IMG/VR virus record: IMGVR_UViG_3300020179_000005
Location: 124,001 to 188,000 of that record
Reading direction: 5' to 3' (one strand)
DNA length: 64,000 nucleotides
Shown in pieces: positions 12,869 to 27,481 of this stretch. The notes beneath the pieces were generated by a model, which was given only the letters and a program-made list of their open reading frames with translations, made no database searches and was not told where the DNA came from. How positions within the stretch are numbered: the first letter of the stretch is position 1; each line of letters opens with the position of its first letter. A program made the position numbers and the translations under genes.

Positions 12869-13087
12869 GTAAAAGAAATACACAAAAGAAATACACCCCT
12901 GGGTCAGCGGGCTCTGCTGATCCGGGGGTTTTTCTTTTATGACTAGCAGATAGATTGCTAGTTTGCTCCTCTGTTCTATGCAGAAATGCAAACAAGGGCT
13001 GTGCTGTGCATCTGGCACCACAATAAACACGAACCAGATATTCTTGTTGCCCGTTGGGGAATACCCAACAAACAAGGAGGTAAGCTC

Positions 13088-13429: not shown

Positions 13430-13463
13430 CCACGAATACCAACGGGCAACAATGAAAAGGATT

Positions 13464-13497
13464 ACCCCTGGGGACTTCGGTCTCCGGGGGTTTTTCT
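13464..13497 (+). terminator. Intrinsic terminator (near-identical copy at ~14628-14661)
   Basis: CCCCTGGGGAC-TTCG-GTCTCCGGGGG followed by a T tract. Confidence 0.85.
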
Positions 13498-13550
13498 TTT
13501 ATGACTAGCCATCCGGCTTGTCATCACCAACTACCTGAGGAGGTAGCGCA

Positions 13551-14609
13551 ATGAAACTTATGAATAAAATCAAGAGATTGCTCTTTATGAGCAAGACAGT
13601 AGAAACGGATATCGTCTGGGTGGCTTTCTCCACCTGGCCCAATCATGGGGAATGGCGTCTCCGTCGTCGGTACATCTGGGTAAGGAATGATCGCAAGATC
13701 GCTTTCTTTATCACTGGTGTCATCATGCTGTTTACCACACCAGTGGTAGCCAGTGTGGCGTACAATGTTCTCAGCGCAGATGAGGACACTGTGGTTGAAC
13801 AAACCACTGAAACAACTATCAACAGTGAACCTGTTGAACCCGGATACACAGAGTATTGCGAAGGCAATGTGTGGCAGTGGGATGAAGTGGTGCAAAATTG
13901 GACATGTCAAGTTGACATTGATCCTACTACCACTACAACATCAACAACACTGCCTCCTGTGCATCAGGTCCAGTATGTGTGTGATATGGCGCCATCAACC
14001 AGCAGTAACTACTTGTTCAGGACATTTACAAGTAGTAATGGCACGGTGATATCAGATGGTAGTGCAGAAGACACGCAGTACATCTTCCCATTGATCCAGG
14101 AGAGCGACATATACCTACATGTTGATATCATGGGCATTAATGAAGATCATGAATTGTGGCGTGAATTTGCAGATGTGGCAGAATATCTGTCAATTTATCT
14201 GAATAAGAACGTCACGGTTGGTATTGGTGAGGTTGATGAAGACTTCAATGGCATGGTTTTGCCAATCAGGTCTGAATTTGATCCTCGTCAATCAGGTACA
14301 AGCAATGGTGGTGGCGGTGTTGCATGGGCTGAAACGCGAGTAAGTGGCTTCTTTGGCATTTACTTTGCGGATACTGCCATATACATCCGCGAAAACTATT
14401 TGTTTGCTACTGGTGATTGGGCGAATGATCCACATCGATCATTTAAGTACACCGGGTTCAGCACCTTGATACACGAATTTGGTCATGCTATTGGCTTTGA
14501 TCATGTTCATGGCAAGGATGCAGTTATGTCATACGAAAGTGATGAATTTGTTCGTCATTACCTACCGGGTGATGATGCAGGTTATCAGGCACTAATTTGC
14601 AATAAGTAA
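13551..14609 (+). CDS. Membrane-anchored metzincin (matrixin-like) zinc metalloprotease
   Basis: HEFGHAIGFDH (HExxHxxGxxH), Met-turn AVMSY, TM segment, Thr-rich linker. Confidence 0.85.
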   Translation: MKLMNKIKRLLFMSKTVETDIVWVAFSTWPNHGEWRLRRRYIWVRNDRKIAFFITGVIMLFTTPVVASVAYNVLSADEDTVVEQTTETTINSEPVEPGYTEYCEGNVWQWDEVVQNWTCQVDIDPTTTTTSTTLPPVHQVQYVCDMAPSTSSNYLFRTFTSSNGTVISDGSAEDTQYIFPLIQESDIYLHVDIMGINEDHELWREFADVAEYLSIYLNKNVTVGIGEVDEDFNGMVLPIRSEFDPRQSGTSNGGGGVAWAETRVSGFFGIYFADTAIYIRENYLFATGDWANDPHRSFKYTGFSTLIHEFGHAIGFDHVHGKDAVMSYESDEFVRHYLPGDDAGYQALICNK

Positions 14610-14714
14610 GTAATAAGAAAAAGGATCACCCCTGGGGACTTCGGTCTCCGGGGGTTTTTCTTTTATGACTAGGCATCCGGCCTGTCATACCCAACTACCT
14701 AAGGAGGTAGCGCA

Positions 14715-15464
14715 ATGAATAACAAAATCCGAATAATCGAATCAATCAAGGAAGACCTACGCAGGGCCGGACATTCCCTTAGTGATTATCAGGCGGCTTG
14801 GAAGATGTTGCTAGATTCTGTCAAAGTCGAGGGTAATGACAGCAAGTTCAAGGTCATCAAGGTAGAGACCGAAAACAACAAGAAGATGTTTCCGCTTTTC
14901 TTGCACGACACCCTTACTGGCACAATTGACGAAGAAGAATGTTATCTTCACAACGAACTTAGCAGGTTTGAATTTGATATGACTCAAGGGTTTGTGGCTA
15001 ACGAACACGCTTACTTGTTTGCCTATGGAGAAAGCTTGATCGTTCAAGTGATTATTCGTTTTATGAGCTTTATCGGCGACAACTTTATATTTGATGATGA
15101 TGCGACAAAGTCTGGAAATCGAATCGGAGACTTTACTGCACTTGCGTGGGATTACAATAGCTACAAATACATGGTCGATCCACAAACTTATGGATCATCG
15201 CAAGACATTAATAAGGGCGGTCTTAAAGAGTTTTTCTTTCTTGATGACTCTCGTCATGGCTGGGGTCGCCAGAGTGGACTAGAAGTTCTTGCAGATGTAT
15301 TTGATGGTCATCCAGTTATTGAATCTATCTTGCAGACGAACATGCCAACTTTGTATGGCTACAAGCCTCACAATCCAAGGAATCCTTGGGACGTGTTAAT
15401 CGAGAAGCTAGACGAATACAACAAACAACTAATCGAACGAAACAACAAAAAGGAGAATCAATAA
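14715..15464 (+). CDS. Hypothetical protein
   Basis: 249 aa, AAGGAGG RBS. Confidence 0.7.
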   Translation: MNNKIRIIESIKEDLRRAGHSLSDYQAAWKMLLDSVKVEGNDSKFKVIKVETENNKKMFPLFLHDTLTGTIDEEECYLHNELSRFEFDMTQGFVANEHAYLFAYGESLIVQVIIRFMSFIGDNFIFDDDATKSGNRIGDFTALAWDYNSYKYMVDPQTYGSSQDINKGGLKEFFFLDDSRHGWGRQSGLEVLADVFDGHPVIESILQTNMPTLYGYKPHNPRNPWDVLIEKLDEYNKQLIERNNKKENQ

Positions 15465-16177
15465 TGACTAATTCACCAATGCCCAACCCAACACGCTTGG
15501 AGGCTATGCAACCAGTCTGGAACAATCTCCTAGGAGATGCGGTCTTGGTTGACATGAATAACAACAAGATTGAGTTGAAGCTCAATGAATTCAATCACGA
15601 CAAGAAGTTCTTCAAGATCAATGTCGTGGATGAAATCAAGGGTGAACAACATCTGATGGTTCCGTGTCCGATTGCCCTTGTTGAATACAATGGCGTTGAG
15701 TATCATCATAACTACTTACTTCTGTGGGGTGAATCTGCAGTTGTTCAGGTTAGGATAAATTACAGGACCAACTTTCATCCTGAATATCCTGATCACATCT
15801 GGTCGATTGATCCTTCACCGGAGACTGACTTCATGGCTTGGCTATGGAAATCAGATGCGTACGCTGCGGATGTCAAGGTTTTGTGGAACAATCGAAACCC
15901 TGAAGACAATTGCCAAGACTTTAGCCCAGATGGTCGTTTCAAGCTCATTAATTATAACGATCACTTTGAGCTTCACGAAAGGCTCTCAGGCAACTGGGTG
16001 TGGGTAGACGAATTTGTTCTCAATACGACTTTCTTGCTCGCGGATGTGTTGCTTATTCCGACACATGCTGATATGTGGAGTTGGCTTGTTTGGAGGGTAA
16101 ACACCGAGACCGACTTGTCCAATCCGGACAGCTACTTTAATACGAAGTATCACTACAACAAAAGGGAGAATCAATAA
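15464..16177 (+). CDS. Hypothetical protein, apparent paralogue of the preceding gene
   Basis: AGGAG RBS; shared segments YLFAYGESLIVQV / YLLLWGESAVVQV, DFTALAW / DFMAWLW, VLADVF / LLADVL, KKENQ / KRENQ. Confidence 0.7.
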   Translation: MTNSPMPNPTRLEAMQPVWNNLLGDAVLVDMNNNKIELKLNEFNHDKKFFKINVVDEIKGEQHLMVPCPIALVEYNGVEYHHNYLLLWGESAVVQVRINYRTNFHPEYPDHIWSIDPSPETDFMAWLWKSDAYAADVKVLWNNRNPEDNCQDFSPDGRFKLINYNDHFELHERLSGNWVWVDEFVLNTTFLLADVLLIPTHADMWSWLVWRVNTETDLSNPDSYFNTKYHYNKRENQ

Positions 16178-16485
16178 TGCGTAAGCAGAGCAGAAGAACA
16201 CTTCCGAGGTGCAATGCACAGATATGGCCGAAGAAGAAATACAAACTGAAGAACGGTTTGGAAAGAACACCTGCCATACCCGGTCAACCGAATAATCAGC
16301 GGTGCACCAGGTCAATTAGGTGTCCTCACCACAAGAATCGTAATTCAGAATGCCCAGTAATTGAAGAGGTGGGCAAGACAGTATTCCTTTCCTGGGAACA
16401 GGTCAAGGAATTAATCAACAATGGTCACAGAGAAGTGACTGGAAGAAACTACTACGAGGACAGAAAGGAGAGCAGCAATGCCTAA
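16177..16485 (+). CDS. Basic hypothetical protein with Cys/His cluster
   Basis: TAATG coupling; RCNA…RCTR..RCPHH. Confidence 0.6.
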   Translation: MRKQSRRTLPRCNAQIWPKKKYKLKNGLERTPAIPGQPNNQRCTRSIRCPHHKNRNSECPVIEEVGKTVFLSWEQVKELINNGHREVTGRNYYEDRKESSNA

Positions 16486-16645
16486 TACGCCACTAGCGGG
16501 AGAAAAGTACGGTTGTGCAAAACAACGCAGAGTCGTACATTTCGCAGTGACACTTGAACAATACGAAAGTATTGAAGATGACGCCATGATGGCAAACATG
16601 ACGGTATCTGAATACATTCGTTTCAAGTTGGAATTGAATAAATAA
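16478..16645 (+). CDS. Small ribbon-helix-helix-like DNA-binding protein
   Basis: 55 aa read by hand: RVVHFAVTLEQYESIEDDAMMANMTVSEYIRFKL; AAGGAG RBS. Confidence 0.55.
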   Translation: MPNTPLAGEKYGCAKQRRVVHFAVTLEQYESIEDDAMMANMTVSEYIRFKLELNK

Positions 16646-16697
16646 CTAATAAAAGATTGGGGGATGGCCCTTACCCTCTGGGGGCCATCCCTTTTTC

Positions 16698-16830
16698 TTT
16701 ATTGCTAGCCATCCGGTTTCTTGCTACCGGGTGGTTGGCTCTTCGTAGAGGAGATGCGTGCTGCTCTCCTCTGCGCTCCTTTGCCAGAGATGAGTACATT
16801 ACTAGTAAATCCAGTTTTTTTTATGACTAG
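16698..16830 (+). repeat. ~135-bp non-coding two-hairpin unit (second copy ~17136-17271)
   Basis: Both copies lie between two motif copies; stem GGAGA/TCTCC in one versus GGGGA/TCCCC in the other. Confidence 0.7.
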
Positions 16831-16873
16831 GAATATGGTTTCTTAGTTAAGGGTCTTAGGAGGGCCCAGAACA

Positions 16874-17086
16874 ATGAAGGACTTATTCGATTTATTTGAG
16901 GAAGAATTTGATCTCAGATTGCAATGGATAGAAATGCTGGGTAGGCAGCGGATTCTTTGGAATAGTCAGGGAAGAGGAAGAAACGATGAAGTGGACAAAG
17001 AATTTCGTAGGGTTTGCGATGAGTGCTGCAGGATTGGCATCTTGTTGGCAAGGAAGCAGACTGAATTAGAGGAATTTCAACTCTAA
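16874..17086 (+). CDS. Hypothetical protein
   Basis: AGGAGG RBS in a shared leader. Confidence 0.6.
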   Translation: MKDLFDLFEEEFDLRLQWIEMLGRQRILWNSQGRGRNDEVDKEFRRVCDECCRIGILLARKQTELEEFQL

Positions 17087-17335
17087 TTCATGTGTAAGGA
17101 AAGGATGAGTACATTACTAGTAAATTCATTTTTTCTTTATGGCTAGCCATCCGGTTTCTTGCTTTCCGGTGGTTGGCTCTTCTGAGAGGGGATGCGTTCG
17201 GCTCCCCTTTATGCTTTTCTTTGCCAGGGATGAGTACATAACTAGTAAATCCAGTTTTTTTTTATGGCTAGAGTAAAGGTCTCTGGCTAGGCAGCTCTAC
17301 TGCGCCTAAAAGATAGTAGAGGGAAGGAGCTGCTC

Positions 17336-17662
17336 ATGGCTGGCTACAGTAAGCCAGAAATGAAGCAGTGGCTTTTTGACTTGGTTCTGGAAGGTAATAA
17401 AACGCTTCCAGACTGGCAAGTTGAGATCGACACAAGTGTGTGGGCAGCCTGCACACCAGAAGGTTTCTCCTTGCAGCTCAAGCGAACCGTTGGGGATTAC
17501 TACAAAGTGATCCACCTAGGCGTTATTCGCTGGGATCAGTTGGAGACTGCAATGAGGTTTTCGTGGGTCGACCGCGAACTCGGTGTAGTAAAGCCACCCG
17601 AAGAGGTTATCAACTGGATGTTACTGGCCAGTTCAGATGCCTCCGACGATTCGGTTGAATAA
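17336..17662 (+). CDS. Hypothetical protein
   Basis: AAGGAG RBS. Confidence 0.65.
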   Translation: MAGYSKPEMKQWLFDLVLEGNKTLPDWQVEIDTSVWAACTPEGFSLQLKRTVGDYYKVIHLGVIRWDQLETAMRFSWVDRELGVVKPPEEVINWMLLASSDASDDSVE

Positions 17663-17720
17663 ACCGATTTCGTTGTGATTATGATGGCGATCACCATATC
17701 GCCTGACCAAGAGAAGAAAG

Positions 17721-17741
17721 AGGGGCTTCGGCCCCTTTTTC
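17721..17741 (+). terminator. Intrinsic terminator AGGGGC-TTCG-GCCCCT plus T tract (also ~18058, ~19890, ~24753)
   Basis: GC stem with a C(UUCG)G tetraloop followed by Ts. Confidence 0.85.
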
Positions 17742-17799
17742 TTTATGGCTAGTATTTAGGTCTCTAATCTGAGATCGCTAGTCAAGAAAGGAAAACCCA

Positions 17800-18003
17800 A
17801 TGGCACGGAAGAAGTCGGCCACCACGCAGAACCCAAAGCGTCGGCGTGGCTTGACTGGCGCTGGGTACATCAACACGTTTGAGTACCTGCCGCAGATGGA
17901 AGCCGTTCATCCGAGGAACGGCTACGGTCTGCGTGCTCCTTGGGAGTATCGCCGTAACTGGCGGCGCTTCCACAAGAACAGCAAGCCGAAAGGGAAGAAG
18001 TAA
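17800..18003 (+). CDS. Small basic hypothetical protein
   Basis: AAAGGA RBS; ends NSKPKGKK, like 19579..19851 (NSKPKGKR). Confidence 0.6.
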   Translation: MARKKSATTQNPKRRRGLTGAGYINTFEYLPQMEAVHPRNGYGLRAPWEYRRNWRRFHKNSKPKGKK

Positions 18004-18183
18004 TTCTTCCATGACACATGATGGCGATCACCATGTCGCCTGACCAAGAGAAGAAGAAGGGGCTTCGGCCCCTTTTTCTTTATGACTAGGACTTAGGTCT
18101 CTAGTTATCGTGCCAGGTATGAGCGACACACCTAATCAACAAGTGTCGCACCTTTCCCGAAAGGGAGAAAGGGGGTATCCATC

Positions 18184-18654
18184 ATGGATACTTTCCTGGT
18201 AGTAATGGCAACGCTCTTCTTGGGCGTTGTGACCCTGGTTTCGGTGATCAATGCCGAAGCCATCAACAAGCACTGGAATCTCGCAATGGAGGCGTACGCA
18301 GATCTTGCGTATTCTTTCCAGGAGTTCTGGTGGACAAGCATCAGGCCTGAAATCAGGGGTCTGATGGGCAAAAAGAACCCAGTCTGGGAACCGCCAACGG
18401 CACTTGGGTACTACTTTGGGGATATCGTCAAGCTTGACGACTCTGAGAAGTGGTACATGGTGTTGTCCAGCGGTATCTGGATGATTTCAGTGAGCTCACC
18501 GCTACTCGTCCATGAGTGCGATGACACACTGAAAGTCGTTCAGGCCAAAGGCTGGAAGTACGTGTACAACAACGAAAAAGTCGTTGAACACGTACCCGCA
18601 GATGCCGTAGAGGCATTTCTCGACAGAATGATCGAGGAGAAGATCTACGGCTGA
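18184..18654 (+). CDS. Hypothetical protein with N-terminal TM segment
   Basis: 156 aa between motif and terminator. Confidence 0.65.
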   Translation: MDTFLVVMATLFLGVVTLVSVINAEAINKHWNLAMEAYADLAYSFQEFWWTSIRPEIRGLMGKKNPVWEPPTALGYYFGDIVKLDDSEKWYMVLSSGIWMISVSSPLLVHECDDTLKVVQAKGWKYVYNNEKVVEHVPADAVEAFLDRMIEEKIYG

Positions 18655-18803
18655 ATGTAAGTAGTTGATTGGCACGAGTCAACTACCTACAGAAGAATTA
18701 GGGTGGTCCCTTACCCTCTGGGGGACCACCCTTTTTCTTTATGACTAGTTTTTAGGTTACCAAAGGTGGCCGCTAGTCAAGGGTCTTAGGAGGGCCCACA
18801 ACA

Positions 18804-19445
18804 ATGGAAGCAATGTTCATCATGCTCATGGAGTTCATGAGCAAAGTCATGAATGCTGTGGAGACACGGCATCATGACGGAAAGCGTACGAAAGGCGAAG
18901 GCTCCGGCATTCATTCTTTCGTTTCGCTTGTACGATGGATCAATCAGAACAAAGGCTTGGTCAAGGCAGCAATTGCCAATGACAGAGAAATGTTCGAGTT
19001 GATCATGAAGCAGGCAAGTCAAACGTTGAAGACATACATCAGAACCGGTGTGTGGAACACGGTGTACTGGGTTACCTCATTCGATGGTTACTTCTACCGC
19101 CACCTGTTCGTCGACGACGACACACGCTACAAAATCAATCCGAAAGTTCACTTCGTGTGGACTCCTCGGAATGGACAAAGCATGACCAAGGACGAAGACA
19201 ATCGTCTTTTTGGTAAAATAAGAAACGTTGCAAACAGTCTGGATAAGGCTGGATACGACGTGTTTTGCTATGACATCGAGTGGGAACCAATCACACTAAA
19301 CATTGGAGACGGCGCGGAAAAACGCGTCAAATACAGCTGTGGAAATGTGTTTGAGCTTCTCGAAGAGTTCCTCGACCGGCCAAGCCAAGAAATCAGTAAA
19401 CTGGTTTGGCAAGCAAAAATGGAAGACAAACTCCAGCACGAATAA
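18804..19445 (+). CDS. Hypothetical protein
   Basis: 213 aa, AGGAGG RBS. Confidence 0.7.
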   Translation: MEAMFIMLMEFMSKVMNAVETRHHDGKRTKGEGSGIHSFVSLVRWINQNKGLVKAAIANDREMFELIMKQASQTLKTYIRTGVWNTVYWVTSFDGYFYRHLFVDDDTRYKINPKVHFVWTPRNGQSMTKDEDNRLFGKIRNVANSLDKAGYDVFCYDIEWEPITLNIGDGAEKRVKYSCGNVFELLEEFLDRPSQEISKLVWQAKMEDKLQHE

Positions 19446-19578
19446 ATGAATAAATAAAGACTGAGGGTGGTTCGGGAAATCCGGCCACCCTCTTTCTTTA
19501 TGGCTAGGAATTAGGTCTGTAGTTTTAGACCGTTAGCTTTTGTGTGTGTATGTGTCAATCAAGTACCAGGAGGTACTC

Positions 19579-19851
19579 ATGTCAATACACGAAATGAACG
19601 ACGACTTCCTCGACAGGATGTTTCTCTTGCAGGAACGCCTGGAAAAGGATGATCGTCAAGGAAACAAAATCCACAAGCGACGAGGTACACACTTCGTCAG
19701 GTACTGGTATTTCCCAAACGAGGACCTGTTCATCGTTGGGAAGTGTGAATCAATGGGCAAAGTGGTGAACACCTGGAGTAAGGAAACAACGTTTCTTCTT
19801 TCCAGCGAACCACCACGCAAAAGCAATAGCAAGCCGAAAGGCAAGCGATAA
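19579..19851 (+). CDS. Hypothetical protein
   Basis: AGGAGG RBS before ATG 19579. Confidence 0.65.
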   Translation: MSIHEMNDDFLDRMFLLQERLEKDDRQGNKIHKRRGTHFVRYWYFPNEDLFIVGKCESMGKVVNTWSKETTFLLSSEPPRKSNSKPKGKR

Positions 19852-19964
19852 CAACCAACACACACACACACACAAATGAAATAAGGGAGAGGGGCTTCGG
19901 CCCCTCTTTCTTTATGACTAGGAATATGGTTTCCTGGTCAAGGGTCCAAGGAGGGCCCAAAATA

Positions 19965-20858
19965 ATGAAAAGCATTAACGACATGGAAATGAAGCGACAG
20001 AAATTGACACAACTATGCCAAGAGGTCACAAGTGATGTAATTAAGAAACATGGTTCCCTACGTAATCAATGTGGCCATGGAGCGTCTGAGCTCAGGAAAC
20101 GGGCAAGGAAATCGGGAATTAAGCTCAATCTTCAGGGTGGCTTATTTAATTATGGCACTGAGCACAACTGGTGTGTTGACCCAGAAACAAACGAGATATA
20201 CGATCCAACTGCAGAGCAGTTCATTATTGGAATCAATGGCCTACAGAATGAAGAGACCTCCAAGCTCTACTTGTCATTGAACGATGATGAAATATCTGAT
20301 TTGCAATCTCTTGCCAGGAGCAAGGGATTTATTTGGAGCTTCAGTGAGGGTGTTTCGCAAATCGTCTTTGGCTACCAAGTAAGTATCGCAAATCAGAAAA
20401 TAGTTGACAAGTTTCGGTTTTACTATCCAGACTTGACTCATGTTGTTGTTCGCAACACAAAGGATGAAGTACGGAAAGCAAAGAATGGTAACACCTATGC
20501 TGTTATCAGAAACAATGTTGTTGAGTTTCATATCGATAAAATGAACGTCAAGAAATGGAAGAATGACTTAAACGTAACAGGTCCTGAAGTGGTGAGTTAC
20601 ATTGTGTTCAAGAATCCGAACAACAGCTATTGGATCAGGGTTGTTGAACAAAGGCTGTTTGTTTCAAAGAATGGAAAGACTGGTGTTATAACCAAACTTG
20701 GTGAAGAATTGAAGAACATCAAGATCAATAAGAAAGGCAAGCTTTACAGGACAATAAAGATCGAAGACGGATGTTTTGTGAATGAAATGATTGATCAGCA
20801 TTACTTTTTGCTAATCAAGAGATTTGAAGAACTTACATCACGTAATAGTGATCAATAA
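19965..20858 (+). CDS. Protein with N-terminal transglutaminase/papain-like Cys-His-Asp domain
   Basis: NQCGHGA…EHNWCVD…IYDPTAEQF pattern. Confidence 0.6.
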   Translation: MKSINDMEMKRQKLTQLCQEVTSDVIKKHGSLRNQCGHGASELRKRARKSGIKLNLQGGLFNYGTEHNWCVDPETNEIYDPTAEQFIIGINGLQNEETSKLYLSLNDDEISDLQSLARSKGFIWSFSEGVSQIVFGYQVSIANQKIVDKFRFYYPDLTHVVVRNTKDEVRKAKNGNTYAVIRNNVVEFHIDKMNVKKWKNDLNVTGPEVVSYIVFKNPNNSYWIRVVEQRLFVSKNGKTGVITKLGEELKNIKINKKGKLYRTIKIEDGCFVNEMIDQHYFLLIKRFEELTSRNSDQ

Positions 20859-20973
20859 ATATTCTTTAGCCGATTGATATACAACTAGTAAATTTAACTA
20901 CATTATTAATCTTTTATTTTTATGACTAGTCATCCGACTTAGTCATCAAACCAAAAATGGGGAGGATAAACCC

Positions 20974-23016
20974 ATGAAAGCAATAAGGTGGATTAACAGG
21001 TTCCAAGACAACTCGTTTCAAGAGATCGAAGTTGATCTAGACAATCTGAAAGCAAAGAACACTTATCAGTTAGTAGAAATCATGCGTCAACTCAACATAA
21101 TCGAGAACAAGCTAGAAACAGGTATTGGTATTGTTGTTGATGAAAACGACCAAAAAGTGGCCGATTGGTTCACTTTCCCAAATCTCAAAGTCTTGATTTA
21201 TGATGAGATTGATGAGTTGGCTGCTAATGAACAAAATGCTGCTCGTGAATCAAAGAACATGATCAGCGGGTACAGGTTTCGGAAATTTGGAACAACGGAA
21301 GTTGGAAAGAACCTTTGGCCAGAGTCACGGTATTATTTAGCACAGATCGTCAATGCTGAGACCGGTGAAGTAGATAAGAACATGTTGGGACAATGGGGTT
21401 ACACCAAGCATGACTGGGGTCAGTGGATATGGGGCCTAGAAGTTAATCTCAATAAGAGAAAGAATGGCAAGGGGTGGACAATTCATTGTTCTTTAAGTGC
21501 GACTTATTACAACAACTATGAATCAATATCAGATGAAAGAAGCAAGAATTATGACCCCCTTTATGTCAAGCTCACAAACGCACTTGAAACAGCGGGAATT
21601 AAAATGAAGCACAAGAAAACGTGCACGACTTTCTTTCAACCAATGAAAGAAATGATCTTTGTCAATGAAACTAAGGTTGGAGTACGTTGCTTGACCACAA
21701 AAGTCGATAAAAATGGATTCAAACCATTGTGGGGGCAATCTCTTTCTCAGCAATTGAAATTCAAGTTTCTACAGGGTGAAGTACAGATTTTGGTCAATGA
21801 TGCGTATCGTTGTCTAGAAAAGGTATACAAGAAGACAGACATTTTGCCAATTTGTGAAAACCTGTCATTTGACAGAATTTTCCCAGACGAATACAATAGT
21901 TTGAGCTACCCCATGCCGACTCAACTGTATGGAATAACTCAAGATCAGTTGCGTTATCTTTCTGGTGCCAAAAACATTCACCAAGCATTAAATAATGCTT
22001 TTGGTACTCCTGTAGAGAAAATGGGCAAAGAAGAATCACGGTATATCTTTCTTGAGATTCCTATCAAAGAAAATTCTGGAATTACAAGAAGAGCATTTGG
22101 TGGGCAACAACAATTCAAGCATTGGCACCATTTGTGCTCGGCCATTCAAATGGTCAGAATGTTCAAAGCATTTGGACTTAATTTCTTTGAACAAATGAAG
22201 ATTGATTTTGTTCTGCCACCAATACCTGTAATGCACAAGGTTGAAAGACTTGGAGGCGATCAGAATTATGCGATATACCCAATAAGAACAGGGTCTAATC
22301 CGGGGAATTACCGTATATACAATGACATACAGAACATGCAAAAGTACTTCAAGACCTTTGGTGCAACAACTGCATACAAGAATCAAATCTTGCAGACTTT
22401 TACATGGGACGAAACTGATACAAAGAAGCTGGAAGAGCTCGCAAAAGAACCACATCGCACCCACGCCACCGCAGCGTGTGAGCGTCAGAATCAGATCTAT
22501 CATCTATTAAATCAAGTTGCTGACACTCTTTCTTCATTGAAGAAAATTCCTGTTGGAAATCGCAGAAAAGCGGTTATTGAACAGGTAAAGAGGCAGAAGT
22601 ATGACTTTGATCAAACTCACGATTACGTAGTTACAGAAGCAATGAAATACAAGAATGAAGCCAGGCCAACGAAAAATACCAGGTTGATCAATTCGTTCGA
22701 TGGCAAAGAAATCATTGATGGAGTAATCTTCAGGGCTCCTAAGACCACGCATGATCTTTACCTGTGGGGTACACAACAGAACAACTGCATCGGAACTTCT
22801 TGGGCAGAAGTTGTTGCCGACAGATATCAATTCATCGTTGGCTTTGAATATGCAGATACGGGTAAGTGGATTGGACATGCAAGGTTCGTACTCCTTGATT
22901 CCGGCAAAGAGCTTGAAATTCAAGAGTTTCGAGGTAAGGGTGAAGAGCCACGAGAAGATCTACGTAAAGAGCTTGTCAAGTGGATGAAGAGCAATTTGGT
23001 AAAGAAGGAAAACTAA
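20974..23016 (+). CDS. 680-aa protein with C-terminal PcfJ-like domain
   Basis: FRAPKTTHDLYLWGTQQNNCIG…IQEFRGK resembles the PcfJ motif. Confidence 0.6.
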   Translation: MKAIRWINRFQDNSFQEIEVDLDNLKAKNTYQLVEIMRQLNIIENKLETGIGIVVDENDQKVADWFTFPNLKVLIYDEIDELAANEQNAARESKNMISGYRFRKFGTTEVGKNLWPESRYYLAQIVNAETGEVDKNMLGQWGYTKHDWGQWIWGLEVNLNKRKNGKGWTIHCSLSATYYNNYESISDERSKNYDPLYVKLTNALETAGIKMKHKKTCTTFFQPMKEMIFVNETKVGVRCLTTKVDKNGFKPLWGQSLSQQLKFKFLQGEVQILVNDAYRCLEKVYKKTDILPICENLSFDRIFPDEYNSLSYPMPTQLYGITQDQLRYLSGAKNIHQALNNAFGTPVEKMGKEESRYIFLEIPIKENSGITRRAFGGQQQFKHWHHLCSAIQMVRMFKAFGLNFFEQMKIDFVLPPIPVMHKVERLGGDQNYAIYPIRTGSNPGNYRIYNDIQNMQKYFKTFGATTAYKNQILQTFTWDETDTKKLEELAKEPHRTHATAACERQNQIYHLLNQVADTLSSLKKIPVGNRRKAVIEQVKRQKYDFDQTHDYVVTEAMKYKNEARPTKNTRLINSFDGKEIIDGVIFRAPKTTHDLYLWGTQQNNCIGTSWAEVVADRYQFIVGFEYADTGKWIGHARFVLLDSGKELEIQEFRGKGEEPREDLRKELVKWMKSNLVKKEN

Positions 23017-23132
23017 TAAATATTCTTTAGCCGACTGATATAAGACTAGTATATTTAACTACATTACTAGTCTTTTTTTTTATGACTAGGAATATGGTTT
23101 CCTAGTCAAGGGTCTTAGGAGGGCCCAAAACA

Positions 23133-23672
23133 ATGAAAGCAAACCGCTACTACATCGCTGGGACTGGCTCTCGTGAGCTGATTCTGGATGTTGACAAGCG
23201 TCGTGAGGTCCGTGATTATCTTGCGGACCTTCTGACAAAGGCAAAGGAAAAGCATGGTGACAAGTTGATTGTCATCAGCGGAATGGCAGAAGGCTTTGAT
23301 GAAGCACTTGCTCGTGCTGCAATCATGGCTGATGTGTCGTTTATCGCGGCAATTCCCAGCCCTGATTACATTGAGTACTACTGGGGTAAAACCAGTATGC
23401 TCAGGCGTAACAGAATGAGTGAAGCACAGGAAATCCTGTCAAAGGCACAAGAAATCGTTTACGTGTGCCCATCAAGCCCAAGCAAACGTGGCAATGGCGT
23501 TAAGTATCCGCAAAACGGTGGTGCAAACATCGACCGAAACGAGTGGATGGTCGACCATGCAAACATTGTCTGGGTGTACAATCCAACTACTCCAGGTACC
23601 GCTAGGTGCTATGCCTACCTCAAGAAGGTTGGCAAGCCCGCATTTATCATTGACACCACTAAAAAGCTTTAA
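23133..23672 (+). CDS. SLOG-superfamily (YspA/DUF1273-like) nucleotide-binding protein
   Basis: IAGTGSR, VISGMAEGFD, AAIP, RNEWMVD, GT..C motifs. Confidence 0.75.
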   Translation: MKANRYYIAGTGSRELILDVDKRREVRDYLADLLTKAKEKHGDKLIVISGMAEGFDEALARAAIMADVSFIAAIPSPDYIEYYWGKTSMLRRNRMSEAQEILSKAQEIVYVCPSSPSKRGNGVKYPQNGGANIDRNEWMVDHANIVWVYNPTTPGTARCYAYLKKVGKPAFIIDTTKKL

Positions 23673-23795
23673 CCAGCTAATTGGTTGGTAATAAGGGATC
23701 TATATATGGCTAGTAAATTTAACTATATTACTAGTCTTTTATTTTTTATGGTTAGCCATCCGGCTACCAAAATCAACAATGGGGAGGAAAAACCC

Positions 23796-24227
23796 ATGAG
23801 TAAGCGGTTTGATCAAGAAATACAGAAGGCAATACAGAAGGGTTACGTTGAAGGACTGACCATCAAGTGCGAGCGATGTGCTGGCACTGGATTGTGGCCA
23901 ACCATCGAAGATCCGGAAGGCTTGCACCACAAGTGCTTTCGGTGCGATGGAACTGGACAAGTTCAGATAATGAGCATCGCGCAAGTTGCACTCATCAGGA
24001 AACTGATGTATGTGGACCAAGTTATTGCCAGGGAGTCCGCTTTCGGAGGCACTACCGCGCAATGGTCACGTATCGAATACAAGATGGCTGGCCATTTGGC
24101 TGGCATGCCCTATCTGTCAATGGCAGAAGGCAGAAAAATCATTGGTGAACTGATGAACTCGAAGAAGACCAAGGAAAAAGAAAGCCTTGATCAATGCGAG
24201 ATCGACTTCGGTCACATCTACGAATAA
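23796..24227 (+). CDS. Protein with DnaJ-type zinc-finger repeats
   Basis: CERCAGTG and CFRCDGTG. Confidence 0.7.
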   Translation: MSKRFDQEIQKAIQKGYVEGLTIKCERCAGTGLWPTIEDPEGLHHKCFRCDGTGQVQIMSIAQVALIRKLMYVDQVIARESAFGGTTAQWSRIEYKMAGHLAGMPYLSMAEGRKIIGELMNSKKTKEKESLDQCEIDFGHIYE

Positions 24228-24372
24228 CAAGGCAAGCAAGAAAAGAAGAAGGGGTCCAAAAGGGCCCCTTTTTCTTTATGACTAGTACTTAGACTTCAAG
24301 TATCAGTCAGGGTTGAAGTGTCGTTTCCCAAATCAAAAATGACGCAATGTACATCCATACAAGGAGGATGAC

Positions 24373-24690
24373 ATGAACAAGCAAATCAAGTGCGGTGCCT
24401 GCGGGCATACGCACCCGACCGTGGCAGAGGTATTCAGCTGCCACAACACACTGGGGGTTTTCAAACTCCAGGAAGCGGATGAACTGGCGAAAGACATGCC
24501 AAAGCGCCAGTTCGTCAAGACTCCAAAGGCACAGGAGCCCAAGACCTACCAGGTCCATGTGTTCCCGACCAAGGAGGGCGCCGAGGCATTCATTGCCAAA
24601 ACGCCAAAGACCCGACTCGGAACGACGAAAGTCAAGTACGTGGACGGACAGCCCGAGAAGACCTATCAGGTCATCGAGAGCTTGAAGTAA
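24373..24690 (+). CDS. Hypothetical protein with N-terminal CxxCxxxH..C zinc site
   Basis: AAGGAGG RBS; KCGACGHTH…SC. Confidence 0.65.
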   Translation: MNKQIKCGACGHTHPTVAEVFSCHNTLGVFKLQEADELAKDMPKRQFVKTPKAQEPKTYQVHVFPTKEGAEAFIAKTPKTRLGTTKVKYVDGQPEKTYQVIESLK

Positions 24691-24838
24691 TAACCTAGCA
24701 GGGGAAAGAAGTCACCCCTGCAAACCAAGAGTCGGGTTCAGCCGACAGTAGAAGGGGCTTCGGCCCCTTTTACTTTATGACTAGTACTTAGGTCTCTATT
24801 CTGAGGCCGCTAGTAGCTCAAGAGAAAGGAAACTCATC

Positions 24839-27481
24839 ATGAGCGCAATCAACCAAGCGGTGAAGGGCGAAATCCCGATCATCGCATTCCTGTCAGGAAA
24901 GTGGCGAATCCTGACCAACAATCCCAGGGCACACGAAAAGTCTGCTCTGGAACTGTTCAGGGATACCAAAGAGCCAATCCAAGTCCAGACACGGACTCCA
25001 CAAGGTAGGACAATTTCCAACTACCTGATGGAAATCCACAATGGAACCTGGATCTACCCTGCGTTGAGCAAGTTGAACAAAAGAGGATTCACATTCCGAC
25101 TTGGTTCAATCTCAATCAGTGACCTAAAGCATGAAATCAAGTTGAAGAGGACCAATATCGACCTGTTGGTTGATGGATCCACTTTTGCTTGGGCAAATGC
25201 GACCTATGCATTCTTCCTTTACATCGATGGAATGGATCGTGAGATCTTCAGCCTCGAGGCAATGGACATGATTGCACTGGATGCAAAGAAGACACCAAAG
25301 CGACTGCAAGAAGTTGGTCGTTCATGCCAGATGTACAAGTCTGGTAAGTTCGACGAACTGAGCTGCTTGATGTTGGTGGACCCCAGCAATGAAATCCCAG
25401 AAGCTGAACATGATCACGGACCGGGTAACTGGCCTGCTGCTCGTGAAGAAGTCACCCTGGAGATGAGCCCTGATGGCAATAATTGCAATCCGTACGACGG
25501 ACCAATCATTGTCAGTCAGAGCTTCTTGCGGGAGATGTGCTACAAGATGGAAGAAGGTCATGAAAAGCGCCGTATGATTGCAATGATCATGGGCAACAAG
25601 ATTGACCGGTTCATCTTCCGACTGAGGACTCCGTACGGACTCGTAAAGGGTTTGGGTTTGTGCAGGCCTGACAGGGTGATGTCTCATGATGTCATCTTCC
25701 ACAGCAGTGCAATCAAGCCGGAGTTCCATTCGGATGGCAACAACTATCTGGCAACGGCGTTCATTCACGAGAACATCCACACGGCGATGTGGGACATGCA
25801 GAGCACGTTCCACAATCACGATTGGTTGTTCACCGAAGAGCGTTTCGTTCAGGACTCAGAGTCATTGGTGGATGACATCACCAAATCGTTCGCAGACAAC
25901 AAAGTGCCGGACTTCATCTTGCACCAAGTAAAGTTTGCTCATGACGAAGCTGGTGTGCACCACGAAGAACCTGTAGTGGCTGGTTGGAAGACCGCTGTTG
26001 TCAGGTGGCTTGAGGCAGGGAATGATCTGTCTGCTTCTGCTTGCTTTAACAGGCTGGCGATTGGTTCTGTAGAAATGCAGATGCAATCAGCACGAGACAA
26101 CAACCGTTGGTGGCTGCCAATGAGCAATGCATTCATGGCAACCGTCAACACCTATGCTGCCTTGGAGCACATGGCGATGATGGACCTTCCGGAAGAGAAG
26201 CGCAATTGTGTCTTCTATCTGGAGAATGTTGGTGTGGTAATTCCCACCGACAGGTTCGTTGATACCGCTGTGTTGCATGACACATGGGATCAAGACGGTG
26301 ATCAAGCCAAGTTCATCTGGATCAAAATCTGGTGCAGCCAGTATGGTCGAGAGAAACTGGAGAAGCTGTATTCGGACTCGGTACTGCCAGTCAACATGAT
26401 TGTGCCAGAGACACCGGAGGAAGCCATCGACGTCTGCGTAGTGATTCGTTCACCAAACGGACCAGGTGGGTACAGCATTGAGTGGTTTGATGCAGAGACC
26501 ATGCCATGGCACAGGCGTAATGACGAGCGGGTTCCGGTCATCGACTTGAACACTGCTCCATTCGGCATGTCGACTTTGCTGGAGACCTCTGAGCGAGGAG
26601 AGATTCCTCATTCAGTGGAGTACACCAGCAGGATGATCACACGAGACAACGTCAAACGGATGATCAGGGCACAGTTGGTAAATCCCAACGTAGGTACGTA
26701 TGCCAACTTGATCATGGCTTACTCTGCAATCATGGGAGTGAGCTATCCTGAGTGGCTGCCGGCAAACAGCAACGATGTGATCGACACCAATCAACAGGAG
26801 GCGGACATCGATTCCTTCCTCTACCTGAAGTTTGGAATGTTGCACATGCAAAAGTTGATCGTGAATGAAATCATTCGCGAACAGGTGCCTGTTGACAAGT
26901 TCGTGTTCAAGACACGTCTGTCGATTGGCATGGACGAAACAGATCAGGACATGCTTGAGGACATTCTGGTGGATGGCAAATTCACCCGTATGGACAATGT
27001 GAACAAGCACACCCTGGATCAAGTCAAGAAGATGATCGTTGAAGTTTCATTCGGTCGTCGTCTGGAATCTGAAACTCGTCAGTTGGTCATGGACAAATTG
27101 TCGATAGTCAAGCCGGAACACGTCGAATGGGCAAGTGGACTCTTCAAGGAGTTCGATGTGCGCCTCAAGCGTGCAGATGCAAAGTACCACTCCTCAGTGG
27201 CCAAGGCCGGTAAACTCGGGTTCAACAGCAAGTATCTCAAGATGTTTGCCGAAACCGAGCGCAGCAGGGAAATTGGCGATATTCAATCGGACCTGTACAA
27301 CAGGATCAATTCACACACAGCACCAGAAAAGTGGGCTGTACTGCTGTACCGGTACATCGTGGATCCGAGCCTGAACTCTGGCAAGTACGGTCTCAGTGAC
27401 CGGATCATCTTCCAGAATGGCCAGGAAGGACAACCCACGGTCATGGACCTGTTGATCCAAGGTTTGGCTGACCTCAAGTAA
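24839..27481 (+). CDS. Single-chain two-barrel RNA polymerase, YonO/cellular-RdRP-like (paralogue 1)
   Basis: Motifs YDGPIIVS, FRLRTPYGLVKG, WDQDGD (DxDGD), IRSPNG, NVGTYAN, DVID. Confidence 0.75.
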   Translation: MSAINQAVKGEIPIIAFLSGKWRILTNNPRAHEKSALELFRDTKEPIQVQTRTPQGRTISNYLMEIHNGTWIYPALSKLNKRGFTFRLGSISISDLKHEIKLKRTNIDLLVDGSTFAWANATYAFFLYIDGMDREIFSLEAMDMIALDAKKTPKRLQEVGRSCQMYKSGKFDELSCLMLVDPSNEIPEAEHDHGPGNWPAAREEVTLEMSPDGNNCNPYDGPIIVSQSFLREMCYKMEEGHEKRRMIAMIMGNKIDRFIFRLRTPYGLVKGLGLCRPDRVMSHDVIFHSSAIKPEFHSDGNNYLATAFIHENIHTAMWDMQSTFHNHDWLFTEERFVQDSESLVDDITKSFADNKVPDFILHQVKFAHDEAGVHHEEPVVAGWKTAVVRWLEAGNDLSASACFNRLAIGSVEMQMQSARDNNRWWLPMSNAFMATVNTYAALEHMAMMDLPEEKRNCVFYLENVGVVIPTDRFVDTAVLHDTWDQDGDQAKFIWIKIWCSQYGREKLEKLYSDSVLPVNMIVPETPEEAIDVCVVIRSPNGPGGYSIEWFDAETMPWHRRNDERVPVIDLNTAPFGMSTLLETSERGEIPHSVEYTSRMITRDNVKRMIRAQLVNPNVGTYANLIMAYSAIMGVSYPEWLPANSNDVIDTNQQEADIDSFLYLKFGMLHMQKLIVNEIIREQVPVDKFVFKTRLSIGMDETDQDMLEDILVDGKFTRMDNVNKHTLDQVKKMIVEVSFGRRLESETRQLVMDKLSIVKPEHVEWASGLFKEFDVRLKRADAKYHSSVAKAGKLGFNSKYLKMFAETERSREIGDIQSDLYNRINSHTAPEKWAVLLYRYIVDPSLNSGKYGLSDRIIFQNGQEGQPTVMDLLIQGLADLK

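What the first reader, a model, noticed from the sequence alone, without database searches (positions are those of the whole stretch)
13464..24838. Mix-and-match cassette architecture: interchangeable terminators and leaders joined at the motif
Seen: a few terminator types recur (CCCCTGGGGACTTCGG x2; GG.CCCTTACCCTCTGGGGG x2; AGGGGCTTCGGCCCCT x4). A few leader types also recur (GAATATGGTTTC…AGGAGGGCCC at ~16831, 19922, 23090; CATCCGG…CTACCT.AGGAGGTAGCGCAATG at ~13510, 14674; …GGGGAGGA.AAACCCATG at ~20958, 23780; TA.TTAGGTCTCT… at ~17753, 24785). They appear in different combinations around unrelated ORFs. Known analogue: PeSL regulatory cassettes that shuffle early genes in T4-type phages. Inference: an integron-like variable gene array rearranged by recombination at these repeats, possibly using the phage RecA.
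Basis: partly seen in the sequence, partly recalled or inferred. Interest (0 to 1): 0.72.

Follow-up and report, generated by a model that had tools for sequence, protein, structure and literature searches.

The report
Phage gene cassettes shuffled at promoters
A 210-kb uncultured lake phage carries a 12-kb row of small accessory genes, each bracketed by the same terminator-plus-promoter-like module, and related phages have gained, lost and reordered these genes exactly at those modules, as known for T4-type phages but here with a different, non-standard promoter motif.

Summary
TTTATGRCTAG occurs 15 times in the 209.7-kb genome (17 with near-variants). All copies are on the + strand and lie in window 12936-24784, against 0.07 expected by chance. 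Almost every copy follows a terminator hairpin and T tract. A leader and start codon follow 40-141 nt downstream. Five terminator types and four leader types pair in different combinations.

The array lies between recA and an 880-aa QDE-1/YonO-like RNA polymerase gene. Relatives support cassette shuffling at the modules:
- A phage with 97.5% identical polymerase lacks one cassette, with the junction inside the shared core. It also has an extra cassette flanked by two copies of a 93-nt module, and two units in swapped order.
- In a second lineage, a 935-nt cassette indel is flanked by a 44-nt module repeat. That cassette is 88-92% identical to one in a third lineage whose flanks are only 71-77% identical.

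The T4 PeSL analogy therefore holds. "Integron-like" does not: the genome has no integrase, and every cassette has its own promoter-like motif. Promoter function is inferred. The motif is not sigma-70-like, and which polymerase reads it is unresolved. I rate this a new variant of a known kind, of moderate interest.

The parts
9241..10203 (+). recA, a conserved left-flank gene
   Evidence: PF00154 E 9e-119. It is 80-85% aa identical in lineages G001 and G006.
12895..12946 (+). Module 1: terminator hairpin, T tract and core TTTATGACTAG. This is the first unit of the array.
13088..13429 (+). Cassette A ORF (113 aa, Lys-rich)
   Evidence: 48% identical homologue in the G001 array
13464..13508 (+). 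Module 2: terminator type T1 plus core, followed by leader type L1
13551..14609 (+). Cassette B ORF, an M10/matrixin-like metalloprotease (HEFGHAIGFDH)
   Evidence: PF00413 E 2.4e-5
14628..14672 (+). Module 3: T1 plus core, followed by L1. The 108 nt at 14612-14719 are 92% identical to 13448-13555.
   Evidence: (repeat family D9)
14715..16645 (+). Cassette C: a four-gene operon with no internal core (ORFs 14715-15464, 15464-16177, 16177-16485, 16478-16645). The last ORF is RHH/NikA-like.
16659..16708 (+). Module 4: terminator T2 plus variant core TTTATTGCTAG
16709..16819 (+). ORF-less structured unit, copy 1 (candidate small RNA or long leader)
   Evidence: Fold -42.1 kcal/mol, z -4.5. 85% identical to copy 2. 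No Rfam match.
16788..16830 (+). Module 5: AT-rich element T3 plus core, followed by leader L3
16874..17086 (+). Cassette E ORF (70 aa)
   Evidence: Homologues in L114 (96%), G006 and L158
17103..17146 (+). Module 6: T3 plus core
17147..17260 (+). ORF-less structured unit, copy 2
   Evidence: L114 has three copies.
17228..17271 (+). Module 7: T3 plus core
17336..17662 (+). Cassette G ORF (108 aa)
   Evidence: In L114 it lies before cassette E, the opposite order
17721..17752 (+). Module 8: terminator T4 (AGGGGCTTCGGCCCCT) plus core, followed by leader L4
   Evidence: hairpin -19.5 kcal/mol
17800..18003 (+). Cassette H ORF (67 aa)
   Evidence: Family also in L114, L128 and G006
18058..18089 (+). 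Module 9: T4 plus core. The 86 nt at 18018-18103 are 93% identical to 17681-17766.
   Evidence: repeat family D5
18184..18654 (+). Cassette I ORF (156 aa)
18700..18748 (+). Module 10: T2 plus core. Its leader is a hybrid: a unique 5' part joined to the 3' part of L3.
   Evidence: (D4, D12)
18804..19445 (+). Cassette J ORF (213 aa)
19464..19507 (+). Module 11: unique terminator plus core
19579..19851 (+). Cassette K ORF (90 aa), flanked by (TG)n and (CA)n runs
19888..19921 (+). Module 12: T4 plus core, followed by L3. This is the left junction of the cassette-L indel.
19965..20858 (+). Cassette L ORF (297 aa). It is absent from the close relative L114 but 91% nt identical in the distant lineage L126/L127.
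20878..20929 (+). Module 13: AT-rich hairpin T5 plus core, followed by L1-type leader. This is the right junction of the cassette-L indel.
20974..23016 (+). Cassette M ORF (680 aa, PcfJ-like C-terminal part)
   Evidence: PF14284 E 8e-6. The family is present in most arrays, at varying positions.
23044..23138 (+). Module 14: T5, core and L3 leader up to the ATG. In L114 this 93-nt module is duplicated on both sides of an extra 542-aa cassette.
   Evidence: hairpin z -4.5
23133..23672 (+). Cassette N ORF (179 aa, DUF1273 / phrog_289-like)
   Evidence: phrog_289 E 6e-12. 88% nt identical in L126/L127. 0305phi8-36 ORF097, annotated as the same family, lies two genes from that phage's RNAP.
23706..23755 (+). 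Module 15: T5 plus variant core TTTATGGTTAG (TTTATGGCTAG in G004 and L114)
23796..24227 (+). Cassette O ORF (143 aa, CxxC zinc-finger)
   Evidence: Weak PF00684 match. Its order relative to cassette M differs in G001.
24251..24285 (+). Module 16: T4-like terminator plus core
24373..24690 (+). Cassette P ORF (105 aa)
24751..24784 (+). Module 17: T4 plus core, followed by leader L4. It lies directly upstream of the polymerase gene.
   Evidence: (D3)
24839..27481 (+). 880-aa two-barrel RNA polymerase candidate (QDE-1/RDR/YonO-like). In all 22 arrays mapped it is the gene at the downstream end.
   Evidence: HDTWDxDGD is invariant in 11 homologues. AF2 model with pLDDT 69.5. The top 16 Foldseek PDB hits are RDR2/QDE-1, prob 0.94-1.0. 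ESM Atlas neighbours carry PF05183. Array maps.

Best explanation
Window 12.9-24.8 kb is the hyperplastic accessory-gene array of an uncultured freshwater jumbo phage. By its terminase the phage is a distant relative of Bacillus phage 0305phi8-36. The array lies between recA and a QDE-1/YonO-like RNA polymerase gene.

The array holds 17 same-strand units. Each unit begins with a composite module. An intrinsic-terminator hairpin and T tract close the previous unit. This is fused to an invariant core TTTATGRCTAG and a downstream WWAGGYCTC box. I infer that the core and box are a compact, phage-specific, non-sigma-70 promoter and initiation region. After the module comes one of a few leader types, each presenting the Shine-Dalgarno sequence in a hairpin.

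The same core, often with 40-95 nt of flanking module, is repeated 17 times in direct orientation. Homology-driven recombination between copies, within one genome or between co-infecting relatives, would then delete, insert, duplicate and reorder whole transcription units. It would also re-pair terminators with leaders, which is the mix-and-match pattern seen.

Shown here: the anatomy; its restriction to this region; conservation of the module in divergent relatives; and three clean cassette indels, one order swap and two between-lineage cassette transfers whose limits lie at the modules.

Inferred, not shown: that the core is a promoter; which polymerase reads it; and which recombination system acts (phage RecA is one candidate).
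For: Motif statistics and location:
- 15 exact copies against 0.07 expected, all on the + strand, all in the array and none elsewhere in the genome.
- Each copy lies 40-141 nt upstream of a start codon or of an ORF-less unit.

Terminators:
- Terminator-like sites number 31 against 10.2 expected in the array, and 11 against 10 in the flank.
- Of 167 distinct sites in 22 loci, 80% have a hairpin of -12 kcal/mol or better just upstream, against 14% of random controls.

Conservation:
- The consensus from 128 and 50 distinct sites spans about 30 nt.
- It is kept in lineages whose polymerase is only 33-46% identical.

Variable content:
- Flank genes are 70-85% aa identical between lineages, while array content is mostly unshared.
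- The 22 array maps show a common pool of cassette families in different orders.

Breakpoints:
- Window versus L114 (polymerase 97.5% identical): cassette L is missing with the junction inside the shared core; an extra cassette is flanked by a duplicated 93-nt module; units E and G are in opposite order.
- L123 versus L125 (97-98% nt identity): a 935-nt indel is flanked by a 44-nt module repeat.
- That cassette is 88-92% nt identical between G001 and G006, against 71-77% for their flanks. Its left limit lies at the terminator hairpin.

Other:
- GC3 of the cassette ORFs ranges from 0.39 to 0.75.
- Independent assemblies give the same order for the window phage (L018 and L019, 100% and 99.98% identical).
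Against: - No RNA data could be obtained; no RNA run was listed. Promoter and terminator activity are therefore inferred from position and conservation only.
- The core has no sigma-70 -35/-10 pattern. Sigma-70-like sites are not enriched (19 against 18.4), and none lies at a core.
- The shared core at some junctions is only 11-17 nt, which is short for RecA-type recombination.
- Two between-lineage transfers have their homology limits at ORF edges and not at the motif.
- Breakpoints in intergenic modules could partly reflect selection for intact units and not the recombination mechanism.
- L114 and L125 are each a single metagenome assembly.
Confidence: 0.75

Rival explanations
1. Integron-like array. 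Cassettes would be captured and excised by a site-specific recombinase acting on the repeated motif as an att-type site.
For: The array consists of directly repeated, oriented short sites between unrelated ORFs, and its content varies among relatives.
Against: The whole genome has no tyrosine integrase. Pfam and PHROGs scans of the array ORFs found no recombinase. Each cassette has its own promoter-like core and terminator, whereas integron cassettes are mostly promoterless behind one Pc. Junctions show variable lengths of flanking homology (11 to 93 nt), which fits homologous exchange and not cleavage at one fixed point.
Confidence: 0.03
2. The modules are purely regulatory and play no mechanistic part in shuffling. 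Illegitimate recombination happens anywhere, and selection keeps only products with intact units, so breakpoints merely appear to sit at the modules.
For: Two transfers between distant lineages have homology limits at ORF edges, about 30 nt inside the start and about 10 nt before the stop, and do not include the modules.
Against: Three indels have their junctions inside identical module sequence, or are flanked by direct repeats of the module (44 and 93 nt). That is the signature of homology-driven exchange. Hybrid leaders such as the one at 18738 also indicate crossovers inside repeated regulatory sequence.
Confidence: 0.12
3. The conserved core is an RNA-level signal, for example a cleavage site for a phage or host endoribonuclease. 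A long transcript would be cut into stable monocistronic mRNAs, and the hairpins would serve as 3' stabilisers and not as terminators.
For: The core is strand-specific and always lies between a 3' hairpin and a 5' leader hairpin. It is unlike a sigma-70 promoter. The polymerase family also exists in a 97%-complete relative with no copy of the motif.
Against: The hairpins are followed by conserved T tracts typical of intrinsic terminators, which a stabiliser would not need. With 12-16-bp GC stems after every unit, a read-through transcript is unlikely. The conserved block of about 30 nt with an AGG box at a fixed distance resembles compact phage-polymerase promoters (the comparison itself is from my own knowledge).
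Confidence: 0.1
4. Assembly artefact. The differences in cassette order and content between contigs would be chimeras made by metagenome assemblers at the repeats.
For: Logan contigs of four lake runs break at the repeated modules, and the 'joints' there have only about 30 nt on the shorter side. The modules are shorter than a read pair.
Against: Independent assemblies give the identical order for the window phage. The same holds for the G001/G002 pair and the G005/G006 pair. The variants carry genes that are absent from the other genome altogether, not just reorderings.
Confidence: 0.05

Closest known systems
PeSL (promoter-early stem-loop) cassettes of T4-type phages (Arbiol et al. 2010, PMC2839356; Comeau et al. 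2014, PMC4122927)
   Same: Both are composite stem-loop terminator plus promoter modules. Both are repeated many times in hyperplastic regions, mostly upstream of ORFans. In both, indels and replacements between related phages have their junctions in the modules, and homologous recombination is the proposed mechanism.
   Different: PeSL promoters match the sigma-70 -35/-10 consensus, and this core does not. This phage is not T4-type by its terminase, whose nearest isolates are Moorella phage MTATph1 and the Bacillus 0305phi8-36 group. Here the terminator sits at a fixed place immediately 5' of the core, whereas PeSLs have five stem-loop placements. PeSL promoter and terminator activities and mini-circles were shown experimentally; none of that is shown here.
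Phage-specific promoter candidates and the monocistronic 'host-takeover' region of Bacillus phage 0305phi8-36 (Hardies et al. 2007, PMC2147016)
   Same: Both are jumbo phages with a Pfam05183-type (RdRP-like) polymerase gene and no sigma factor. Both have a run of small, separately transcribed ORFs beside the polymerase gene, including a DUF1273 gene. Both have a conserved phage-specific motif in the noncoding gaps. In the 0305phi8-36 sequence the motif is likewise a hairpin followed by a T tract and TGTA/TATGTA.
   Different: The motif sequences differ: CGTTCGCACG hairpin plus TTTTGTA there, a variable hairpin plus TTTATGRCTAG here. The two polymerases show no detectable sequence similarity. 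In 0305phi8-36 the polymerase gene lies at the upstream end of the small-ORF run; here it lies at the downstream end. Cassette shuffling at the motif was not described for 0305phi8-36.
Morons of lambdoid and other phages (as described in PMC2147016)
   Same: Each is an autonomous gene unit with its own promoter and terminator, set between other genes, with a patchy distribution.
   Different: Morons are scattered single insertions with unrelated regulatory sequences. Here 17 units form one array and share one module.
Integrons
   Same: Both are arrays of oriented cassettes separated by short repeated sites, with content that varies among relatives.
   Different: There is no integrase, I saw no attC-type sites, the cassettes are not promoterless, and the junctions look like homologous exchange.
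YonO of prophage SPbeta and QDE-1/RDR polymerases (Forrest et al. 2017, PMC5467207), as comparators for the 880-aa protein
   Same: All are single-chain proteins with a DxDGD metal-binding motif, and the predicted fold matches QDE-1/RDR2. The YonO promoter sequence was still undefined in that 2017 paper.
   Different: No sequence-level match to Pfam PF05183 or to any PDB chain. The TM-scores are only 0.34-0.38.

Membership tests
PeSL regulatory cassettes (T4-type phages) | Composite intergenic module of a stem-loop terminator/attenuator plus a promoter | tested here: inconclusive
   A hairpin and T tract lie upstream of 80% of 167 sites. A promoter is inferred from position and conservation only, because no RNA data could be obtained.
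PeSL regulatory cassettes (T4-type phages) | The promoter matches the sigma-70 -35/-10 consensus | tested here: not met
   No sigma-70-like site at any core, and 19 sites found against 18.4 expected. The information lies in TTTATGRCTAG and an AGG box, with no conserved -10 hexamer.
PeSL regulatory cassettes (T4-type phages) | Concentrated in hyperplastic regions, mostly upstream of ORFans | tested here: met
   All copies lie in one 12-kb region. Most ORFs have no Pfam or PHROG family. Content is mostly unshared between lineages.
PeSL regulatory cassettes (T4-type phages) | Indel or replacement junctions between related phages lie in the modules | tested here: met
   Three indels and one order swap. 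A transferred cassette has its left limit at the terminator.
PeSL regulatory cassettes (T4-type phages) | Formation of excised mini-circles | not testable with these tools
   Only Logan contigs were available, and their 'goes back' joints at repeats are ambiguous.
PeSL regulatory cassettes (T4-type phages) | The host genome is a T4-type myovirus | tested here: not met
   The nearest isolates by terminase are Moorella phage MTATph1 and the Bacillus 0305phi8-36 group at 28-38% identity. The replicative polymerase is DnaE-type.
Integron | Adjacent IntI tyrosine recombinase | tested here: not met
   PF00589 has no match in the 209.7-kb genome, while the controls rang in 14 of 14.
Integron | Promoterless cassettes ending in attC sites, expressed from one Pc | tested here: not met
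   Every unit has its own promoter-like core and a terminator.
0305phi8-36-type transcription layout | RdRP-family (two-barrel) polymerase gene and no sigma factor | tested here: met
   for the polymerase. PF04542 is absent from the genome.
0305phi8-36-type transcription layout | A phage-specific conserved motif in the noncoding gaps of a run of small ORFs next to the polymerase gene | tested here: met
   for this phage. The motif sequence differs from that of 0305phi8-36.
Two-barrel QDE-1/RDR/YonO-like polymerases (880-aa protein) | DxDGD catalytic aspartate motif | tested here: met
   HDTWDQDGD, with D484, D486, G487 and D488 invariant in 11 homologues.
Two-barrel QDE-1/RDR/YonO-like polymerases (880-aa protein) | Fold similarity to solved QDE-1/RDR2 structures | tested here: met
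   The top 16 Foldseek PDB hits are all RDR2 or QDE-1, with E from 5e-4 and prob 0.94-1.0, but TM only 0.27-0.38. Model pLDDT is 69.5.
Two-barrel QDE-1/RDR/YonO-like polymerases (880-aa protein) | Sequence match to Pfam PF05183 | tested here: not met
   No Pfam family at E <= 0.01. Only ESM Atlas feature and structure neighbours carry PF05183.
Two-barrel QDE-1/RDR/YonO-like polymerases (880-aa protein) | DNA-dependent RNA synthesis | not testable with these tools
   This needs a biochemical assay.

The most novel reading that the evidence does not exclude
The conserved block of about 30 nt (T tract, TTTATG-NN-TAG, then WWAGGYC at +4 to +10 after the TAG) is the promoter of the phage's own single-chain two-barrel (QDE-1/YonO-like) RNA polymerase. 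The array, polymerase gene included, would then be a self-amplifying regulon. The variable dinucleotide, NC in two polymerase clades and NG in a third, would set polymerase specificity.

This would be the first promoter consensus for that polymerase family, supported by about 180 natural variants.

For:
- The genome has no sigma factor and no beta-prime-type (multisubunit) polymerase.
- The motif is compact and not sigma-70-like.
- Phage 0305phi8-36 shows a parallel layout (PMC2147016).

Against:
- The polymerase gene itself sits behind the motif.
- The motif is absent upstream of all other genes.
- A 97%-complete relative has the polymerase but no copy of the motif.
- Polymerase clade 2b mixes phages with and without the motif.
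Probability: 0.25. Interest if true: 0.8.

Novelty: new variant of a known kind. Interest (0 to 1): 0.58.

Why it matters
Promoter/terminator-mediated modular shuffling has so far been documented in T4-type phages with sigma-70 promoters. This array suggests it is a more general way for large phages to build and trade accessory-gene arrays. It appears here in an unrelated, uncultured freshwater jumbo-phage group, with a different promoter-like signal.

The finding also provides:
- A pool of more than 50 cassette gene families that co-occurring phage lineages exchange. These are candidates for host-takeover or anti-defence functions.
- A well-defined signal of about 30 nt, with about 180 natural variants, that can be tested as the recognition site of a poorly understood polymerase family or of a redirected host polymerase.
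- A ready-made set of natural junctions for studying short-homology recombination in phages.

Tried and rejected
- Megablast of the array against isolated phages found no match. tblastn of the polymerase against isolated phages also found none, so no cultured close relative or host was found.
- RNA-seq runs: none was listed, so transcript ends could not be mapped.
- Read laying on four lake DNA runs returned only Logan contigs, and these break at the repeats. Most 'joints' have about 30 nt on the shorter side, or come from paralogous modules mapping at 85-90% identity. I did not count them as recombinants or circles. A few loose ends suggest further variants but are hints only: at 16708 (exactly the 3' end of a core, continuing into a different leader), 16637, 19456 and 19913.
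- Sigma-70 reading of the core: I tried -35/-10 alignments by eye and with the scanner. None gave a conserved -10, so I rejected it.
- T7-type polymerase (PF00940): no match, but the control genomes did not ring either, so this shows nothing. The beta-prime domain PF00623 is absent, with valid controls.
- Co-variation of polymerase clade with motif dinucleotide: clade 1 is all NC and clade 2a is all NG, but clade 2b is mixed. Kinship alone could explain this, so I did not use it as evidence for who reads the motif.
- Rfam found no family for the ORF-less units or the leaders.
- The 15-mer scan of IMG/VR returned mostly single chance hits. Only contigs with several copies were kept.
- Using polymerase identity as the 'core' baseline for detecting transfers was dropped, because the polymerase evolves much faster than RecA. 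Flank nucleotide identity was used instead.

Full report
**Source.** The window is bases 124001-188000 of a 209,701-bp IMG/VR phage genome with direct terminal repeats, from lake-water metagenomes. Genes up to about 133 kb run on the minus strand. They include a terminase, a DnaE-type polymerase and a class II ribonucleotide reductase. The remaining genes run mostly on the plus strand. The nearest cultured phages by terminase are Moorella phage MTATph1 and the Bacillus 0305phi8-36 group, at 28-38% identity.

**Observation.**
- The joining motif TTTATGRCTAG has 15 exact copies, all on the plus strand and all within window 12936-24784. Shuffles give 0.07 copies, and there are none elsewhere in the genome. 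Two near-variants, at 16698 and 23745, make 17 sites.
- Each site has the same anatomy. A hairpin and T tract run straight into the core. The hairpin is GC-rich, or an AT-rich ACTAGTA...TACTAGT stem. Next comes a semi-conserved nnnTnnGGTYTC box, then a leader and a start codon 40-141 nt downstream.
- Terminator-like sites number 31 in the array against 10.2 +/- 3.8 in shuffles. The left flank shows no excess, with 11 against 10.
- Upstream and downstream halves, clustered separately, give five terminator classes and four leader classes whose memberships do not coincide. One leader type follows four terminator types. The mix-and-match description is therefore correct.

**Surroundings.**
- A true recA lies at 9241-10203.
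- Directly after the last module lies an 880-aa ORF (24839-27481) with an invariant HDTWDxDGD motif.
- Its AlphaFold model (pLDDT 69.5) has plant RDR2 or fungal QDE-1 as its 16 best PDB matches, with probability 0.94-1.0 but TM only 0.27-0.38. ESM Atlas neighbours carry PF05183. It is most likely a single-chain two-barrel RNA polymerase of the YonO/QDE-1 kind.
- The genome has no sigma-70-family factor, no beta-prime domain and no tyrosine integrase.
- The array ORFs are mostly ORFans. Exceptions are an M10-like metalloprotease, a PcfJ-like protein, a DUF1273-like protein, a zinc-finger protein and an RHH protein. Their GC3 ranges from 0.39 to 0.75.

**Relatives.** Searches with the polymerase and with the motif recovered about 60 loci.
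- Independent assemblies of the window phage have the identical array.
- In lineages G001 and G006 the flank genes are 70-85% identical in protein, but the arrays share few genes. The same terminator-core-box module is nevertheless present 12 and 7 times.
- Maps of 22 arrays show the polymerase gene always last. Before it comes a common pool of cassette families in different numbers and orders, nearly always separated by the core.
- Over 128 distinct NC-type and 50 NG-type sites the conserved block spans about 30 nt. Of 167 distinct sites, 80% have a strong hairpin just upstream, against 14% of controls.

1. L114, whose polymerase is 97.5% identical, lacks cassette L (window 19922-20918). Its sequence equals the window's left side up to the core at 19911-19921, then continues with the right side from the core at 20919-20929. 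The crossover therefore lies inside the shared core.
2. L114 has an extra 542-aa PcfJ-like cassette between M and N, flanked by two copies of the 93-nt terminator-core-leader module.
3. Units E and G, each preceded by a copy of a roughly 120-nt ORF-less repeat, are in opposite order in the two phages. L114 also has a third such pair with a new gene.
4. L123 and L125 are 97-98% identical in nucleotides. They differ by a 935-nt cassette flanked by two copies of a 44-nt terminator-core module.
5. That same cassette is 88-92% identical between G001 and G006, whose flanks are only 71-77% identical. Similarity begins exactly at the terminator hairpin and ends at the stop codon. G001 also has an extra terminator-core module of about 100 nt between the cassette's two genes.
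6. Cassette L and N ORFs are 91% and 88% nt identical to ORFs in L126/L127, whose polymerase is 43% identical. Here the homology limits are at the ORF edges.

**Mechanism.** The best reading is a row of autonomous transcription units. Their shared terminator-promoter modules also serve as portable homology for recombination, as in the PeSLs of T4-type phages (PMC2839356, PMC4122927).
- Promoter function is inferred from four things: strand, position after strong terminators, restriction to one gene set, and conservation across lineages whose proteins have diverged greatly.
- The core has no sigma-70 pattern.
- Who reads the core is open.
  - The phage polymerase is a candidate. There is no sigma factor, the motif is compact, and 0305phi8-36 offers a parallel. 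That phage has an RdRP-family polymerase, no sigma factor, and 14 phage-specific promoter candidates that in its sequence are a hairpin plus T tract plus TGTA (PMC2147016).
  - Three facts count against the phage polymerase. Its own gene lies behind the motif. The motif is absent from the rest of the genome. A 97%-complete relative has the polymerase but no motif copy, and polymerase clade 2b mixes phages with and without the motif.
- The role of RecA is untested.

**Rivals.**
- An integron-type mechanism is rejected: there is no integrase, and the cassettes are not promoterless.
- Selection alone could bias breakpoints towards intergenic DNA. It does not explain junctions inside identical module sequence or flanking module repeats.
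- An RNA-processing role for the core cannot be excluded without RNA data, but it fits poorly with the T tracts.
- Assembly chimeras are unlikely, because replicate assemblies agree and the variants carry genes unique to them.

**Novelty.** The principle is known from PeSLs and morons. Three things are new: the phage group, the non-sigma-70 module with the terminator fixed immediately 5' of the core, and the breadth of cassette exchange among co-occurring lake lineages.

**Verdict.** This is a new variant of a known kind, of moderate interest.

Noticed in passing
window 16709-16819 and 17147-17260; L114 at about 755-868, 1362-1476 and 1793-1907: ORF-less, core-to-core units of about 115 nt, 85% identical to each other. 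There are two copies here and three in L114, and each precedes a gene cassette. The predicted structure has a 5' hairpin (CCAUCCGG/CCGGGUGG) and a central hairpin in which GAGGAG/CUCCUC becomes GAGGGG/CCCCUC, a compensatory change. No Rfam family matches. They may be a phage small RNA or a regulated long leader. They also act as long repeats around the E/G order swap.
   Followed up: partly
window 24839-27481: An 880-aa protein with invariant HDTWDxDGD and a predicted fold closest to QDE-1/RDR2. It is probably a YonO-like single-chain RNA polymerase, with no Pfam or PDB sequence match. It evolves fast: 33-46% identity between lineages whose RecA is about 80% identical.
   Followed up: partly
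loci L099, L100, L129-L134, L139 (upstream of the polymerase gene); L142: Sister lineages use TTTATGGGTAG (or AGTAG) in place of TTTATGRCTAG in the same terminator-core architecture. L142 uses TTAATGACTAG. Lineages L101/L102 and L145/L150/L137/L156 have no such module. Their early genes are packed, with GTAATCATG stop-start junctions in L101/L102.
   Followed up: partly
window 16845-16873, 13531-13553, 20955-20976, 23777-23798: The leader types each place the Shine-Dalgarno sequence in or at the loop of a small hairpin: GGGUCUUAGGAGGGCCC, CUACCUGAGGAGGUAG and AUGGGGAGGAUAAACCCAU, the last including the start codon. The last type also precedes the polymerase gene in the distant lineage L101.
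   Followed up: no
window 19541-19556 and 19859-19875: A (TG)n run upstream and a (CA)n run downstream flank cassette K as an inverted pair. The read-laying tool flagged 19847-19885 as a repeat where contigs are cut.
   Followed up: no
window 23745-23755: The variant core TTTATGGTTAG is TTTATGGCTAG in the 99.98%-identical contig G004 and in L114. A single-base polymorphism therefore restores the consensus.
   Followed up: no
window 13551-14609: Cassette B encodes an M10/matrixin-like zinc metalloprotease (HEFGHAIGFDH) with an N-terminal hydrophobic segment. The same family is the first cassette in the NG-type lineages L129, L130 and L139.
   Followed up: no
window 8600-9240 (genome about 132.6-133.2 kb): A very AT-rich divergent intergenic region between the minus-strand arm and the plus-strand arm that starts with recA. 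It contains (CCCCCTA)n-like and TATATA runs and a copy of ACTATATA, an octamer found upstream of about 8 genes on both strands. It may hold an origin or a second promoter class.
   Followed up: partly
L167 (Bacillus phage 0305phi8-36, record 170000-218948): The repeated element of 0305phi8-36 has 16 copies of CGTTCGCACG in this stretch. It is a hairpin followed by TTTTGTA or TTATGTA, the same hairpin, T-tract and (T)ATG/TGTA layout as here. The published '21-bp promoter' may therefore also be a terminator-promoter composite.
   Followed up: partly
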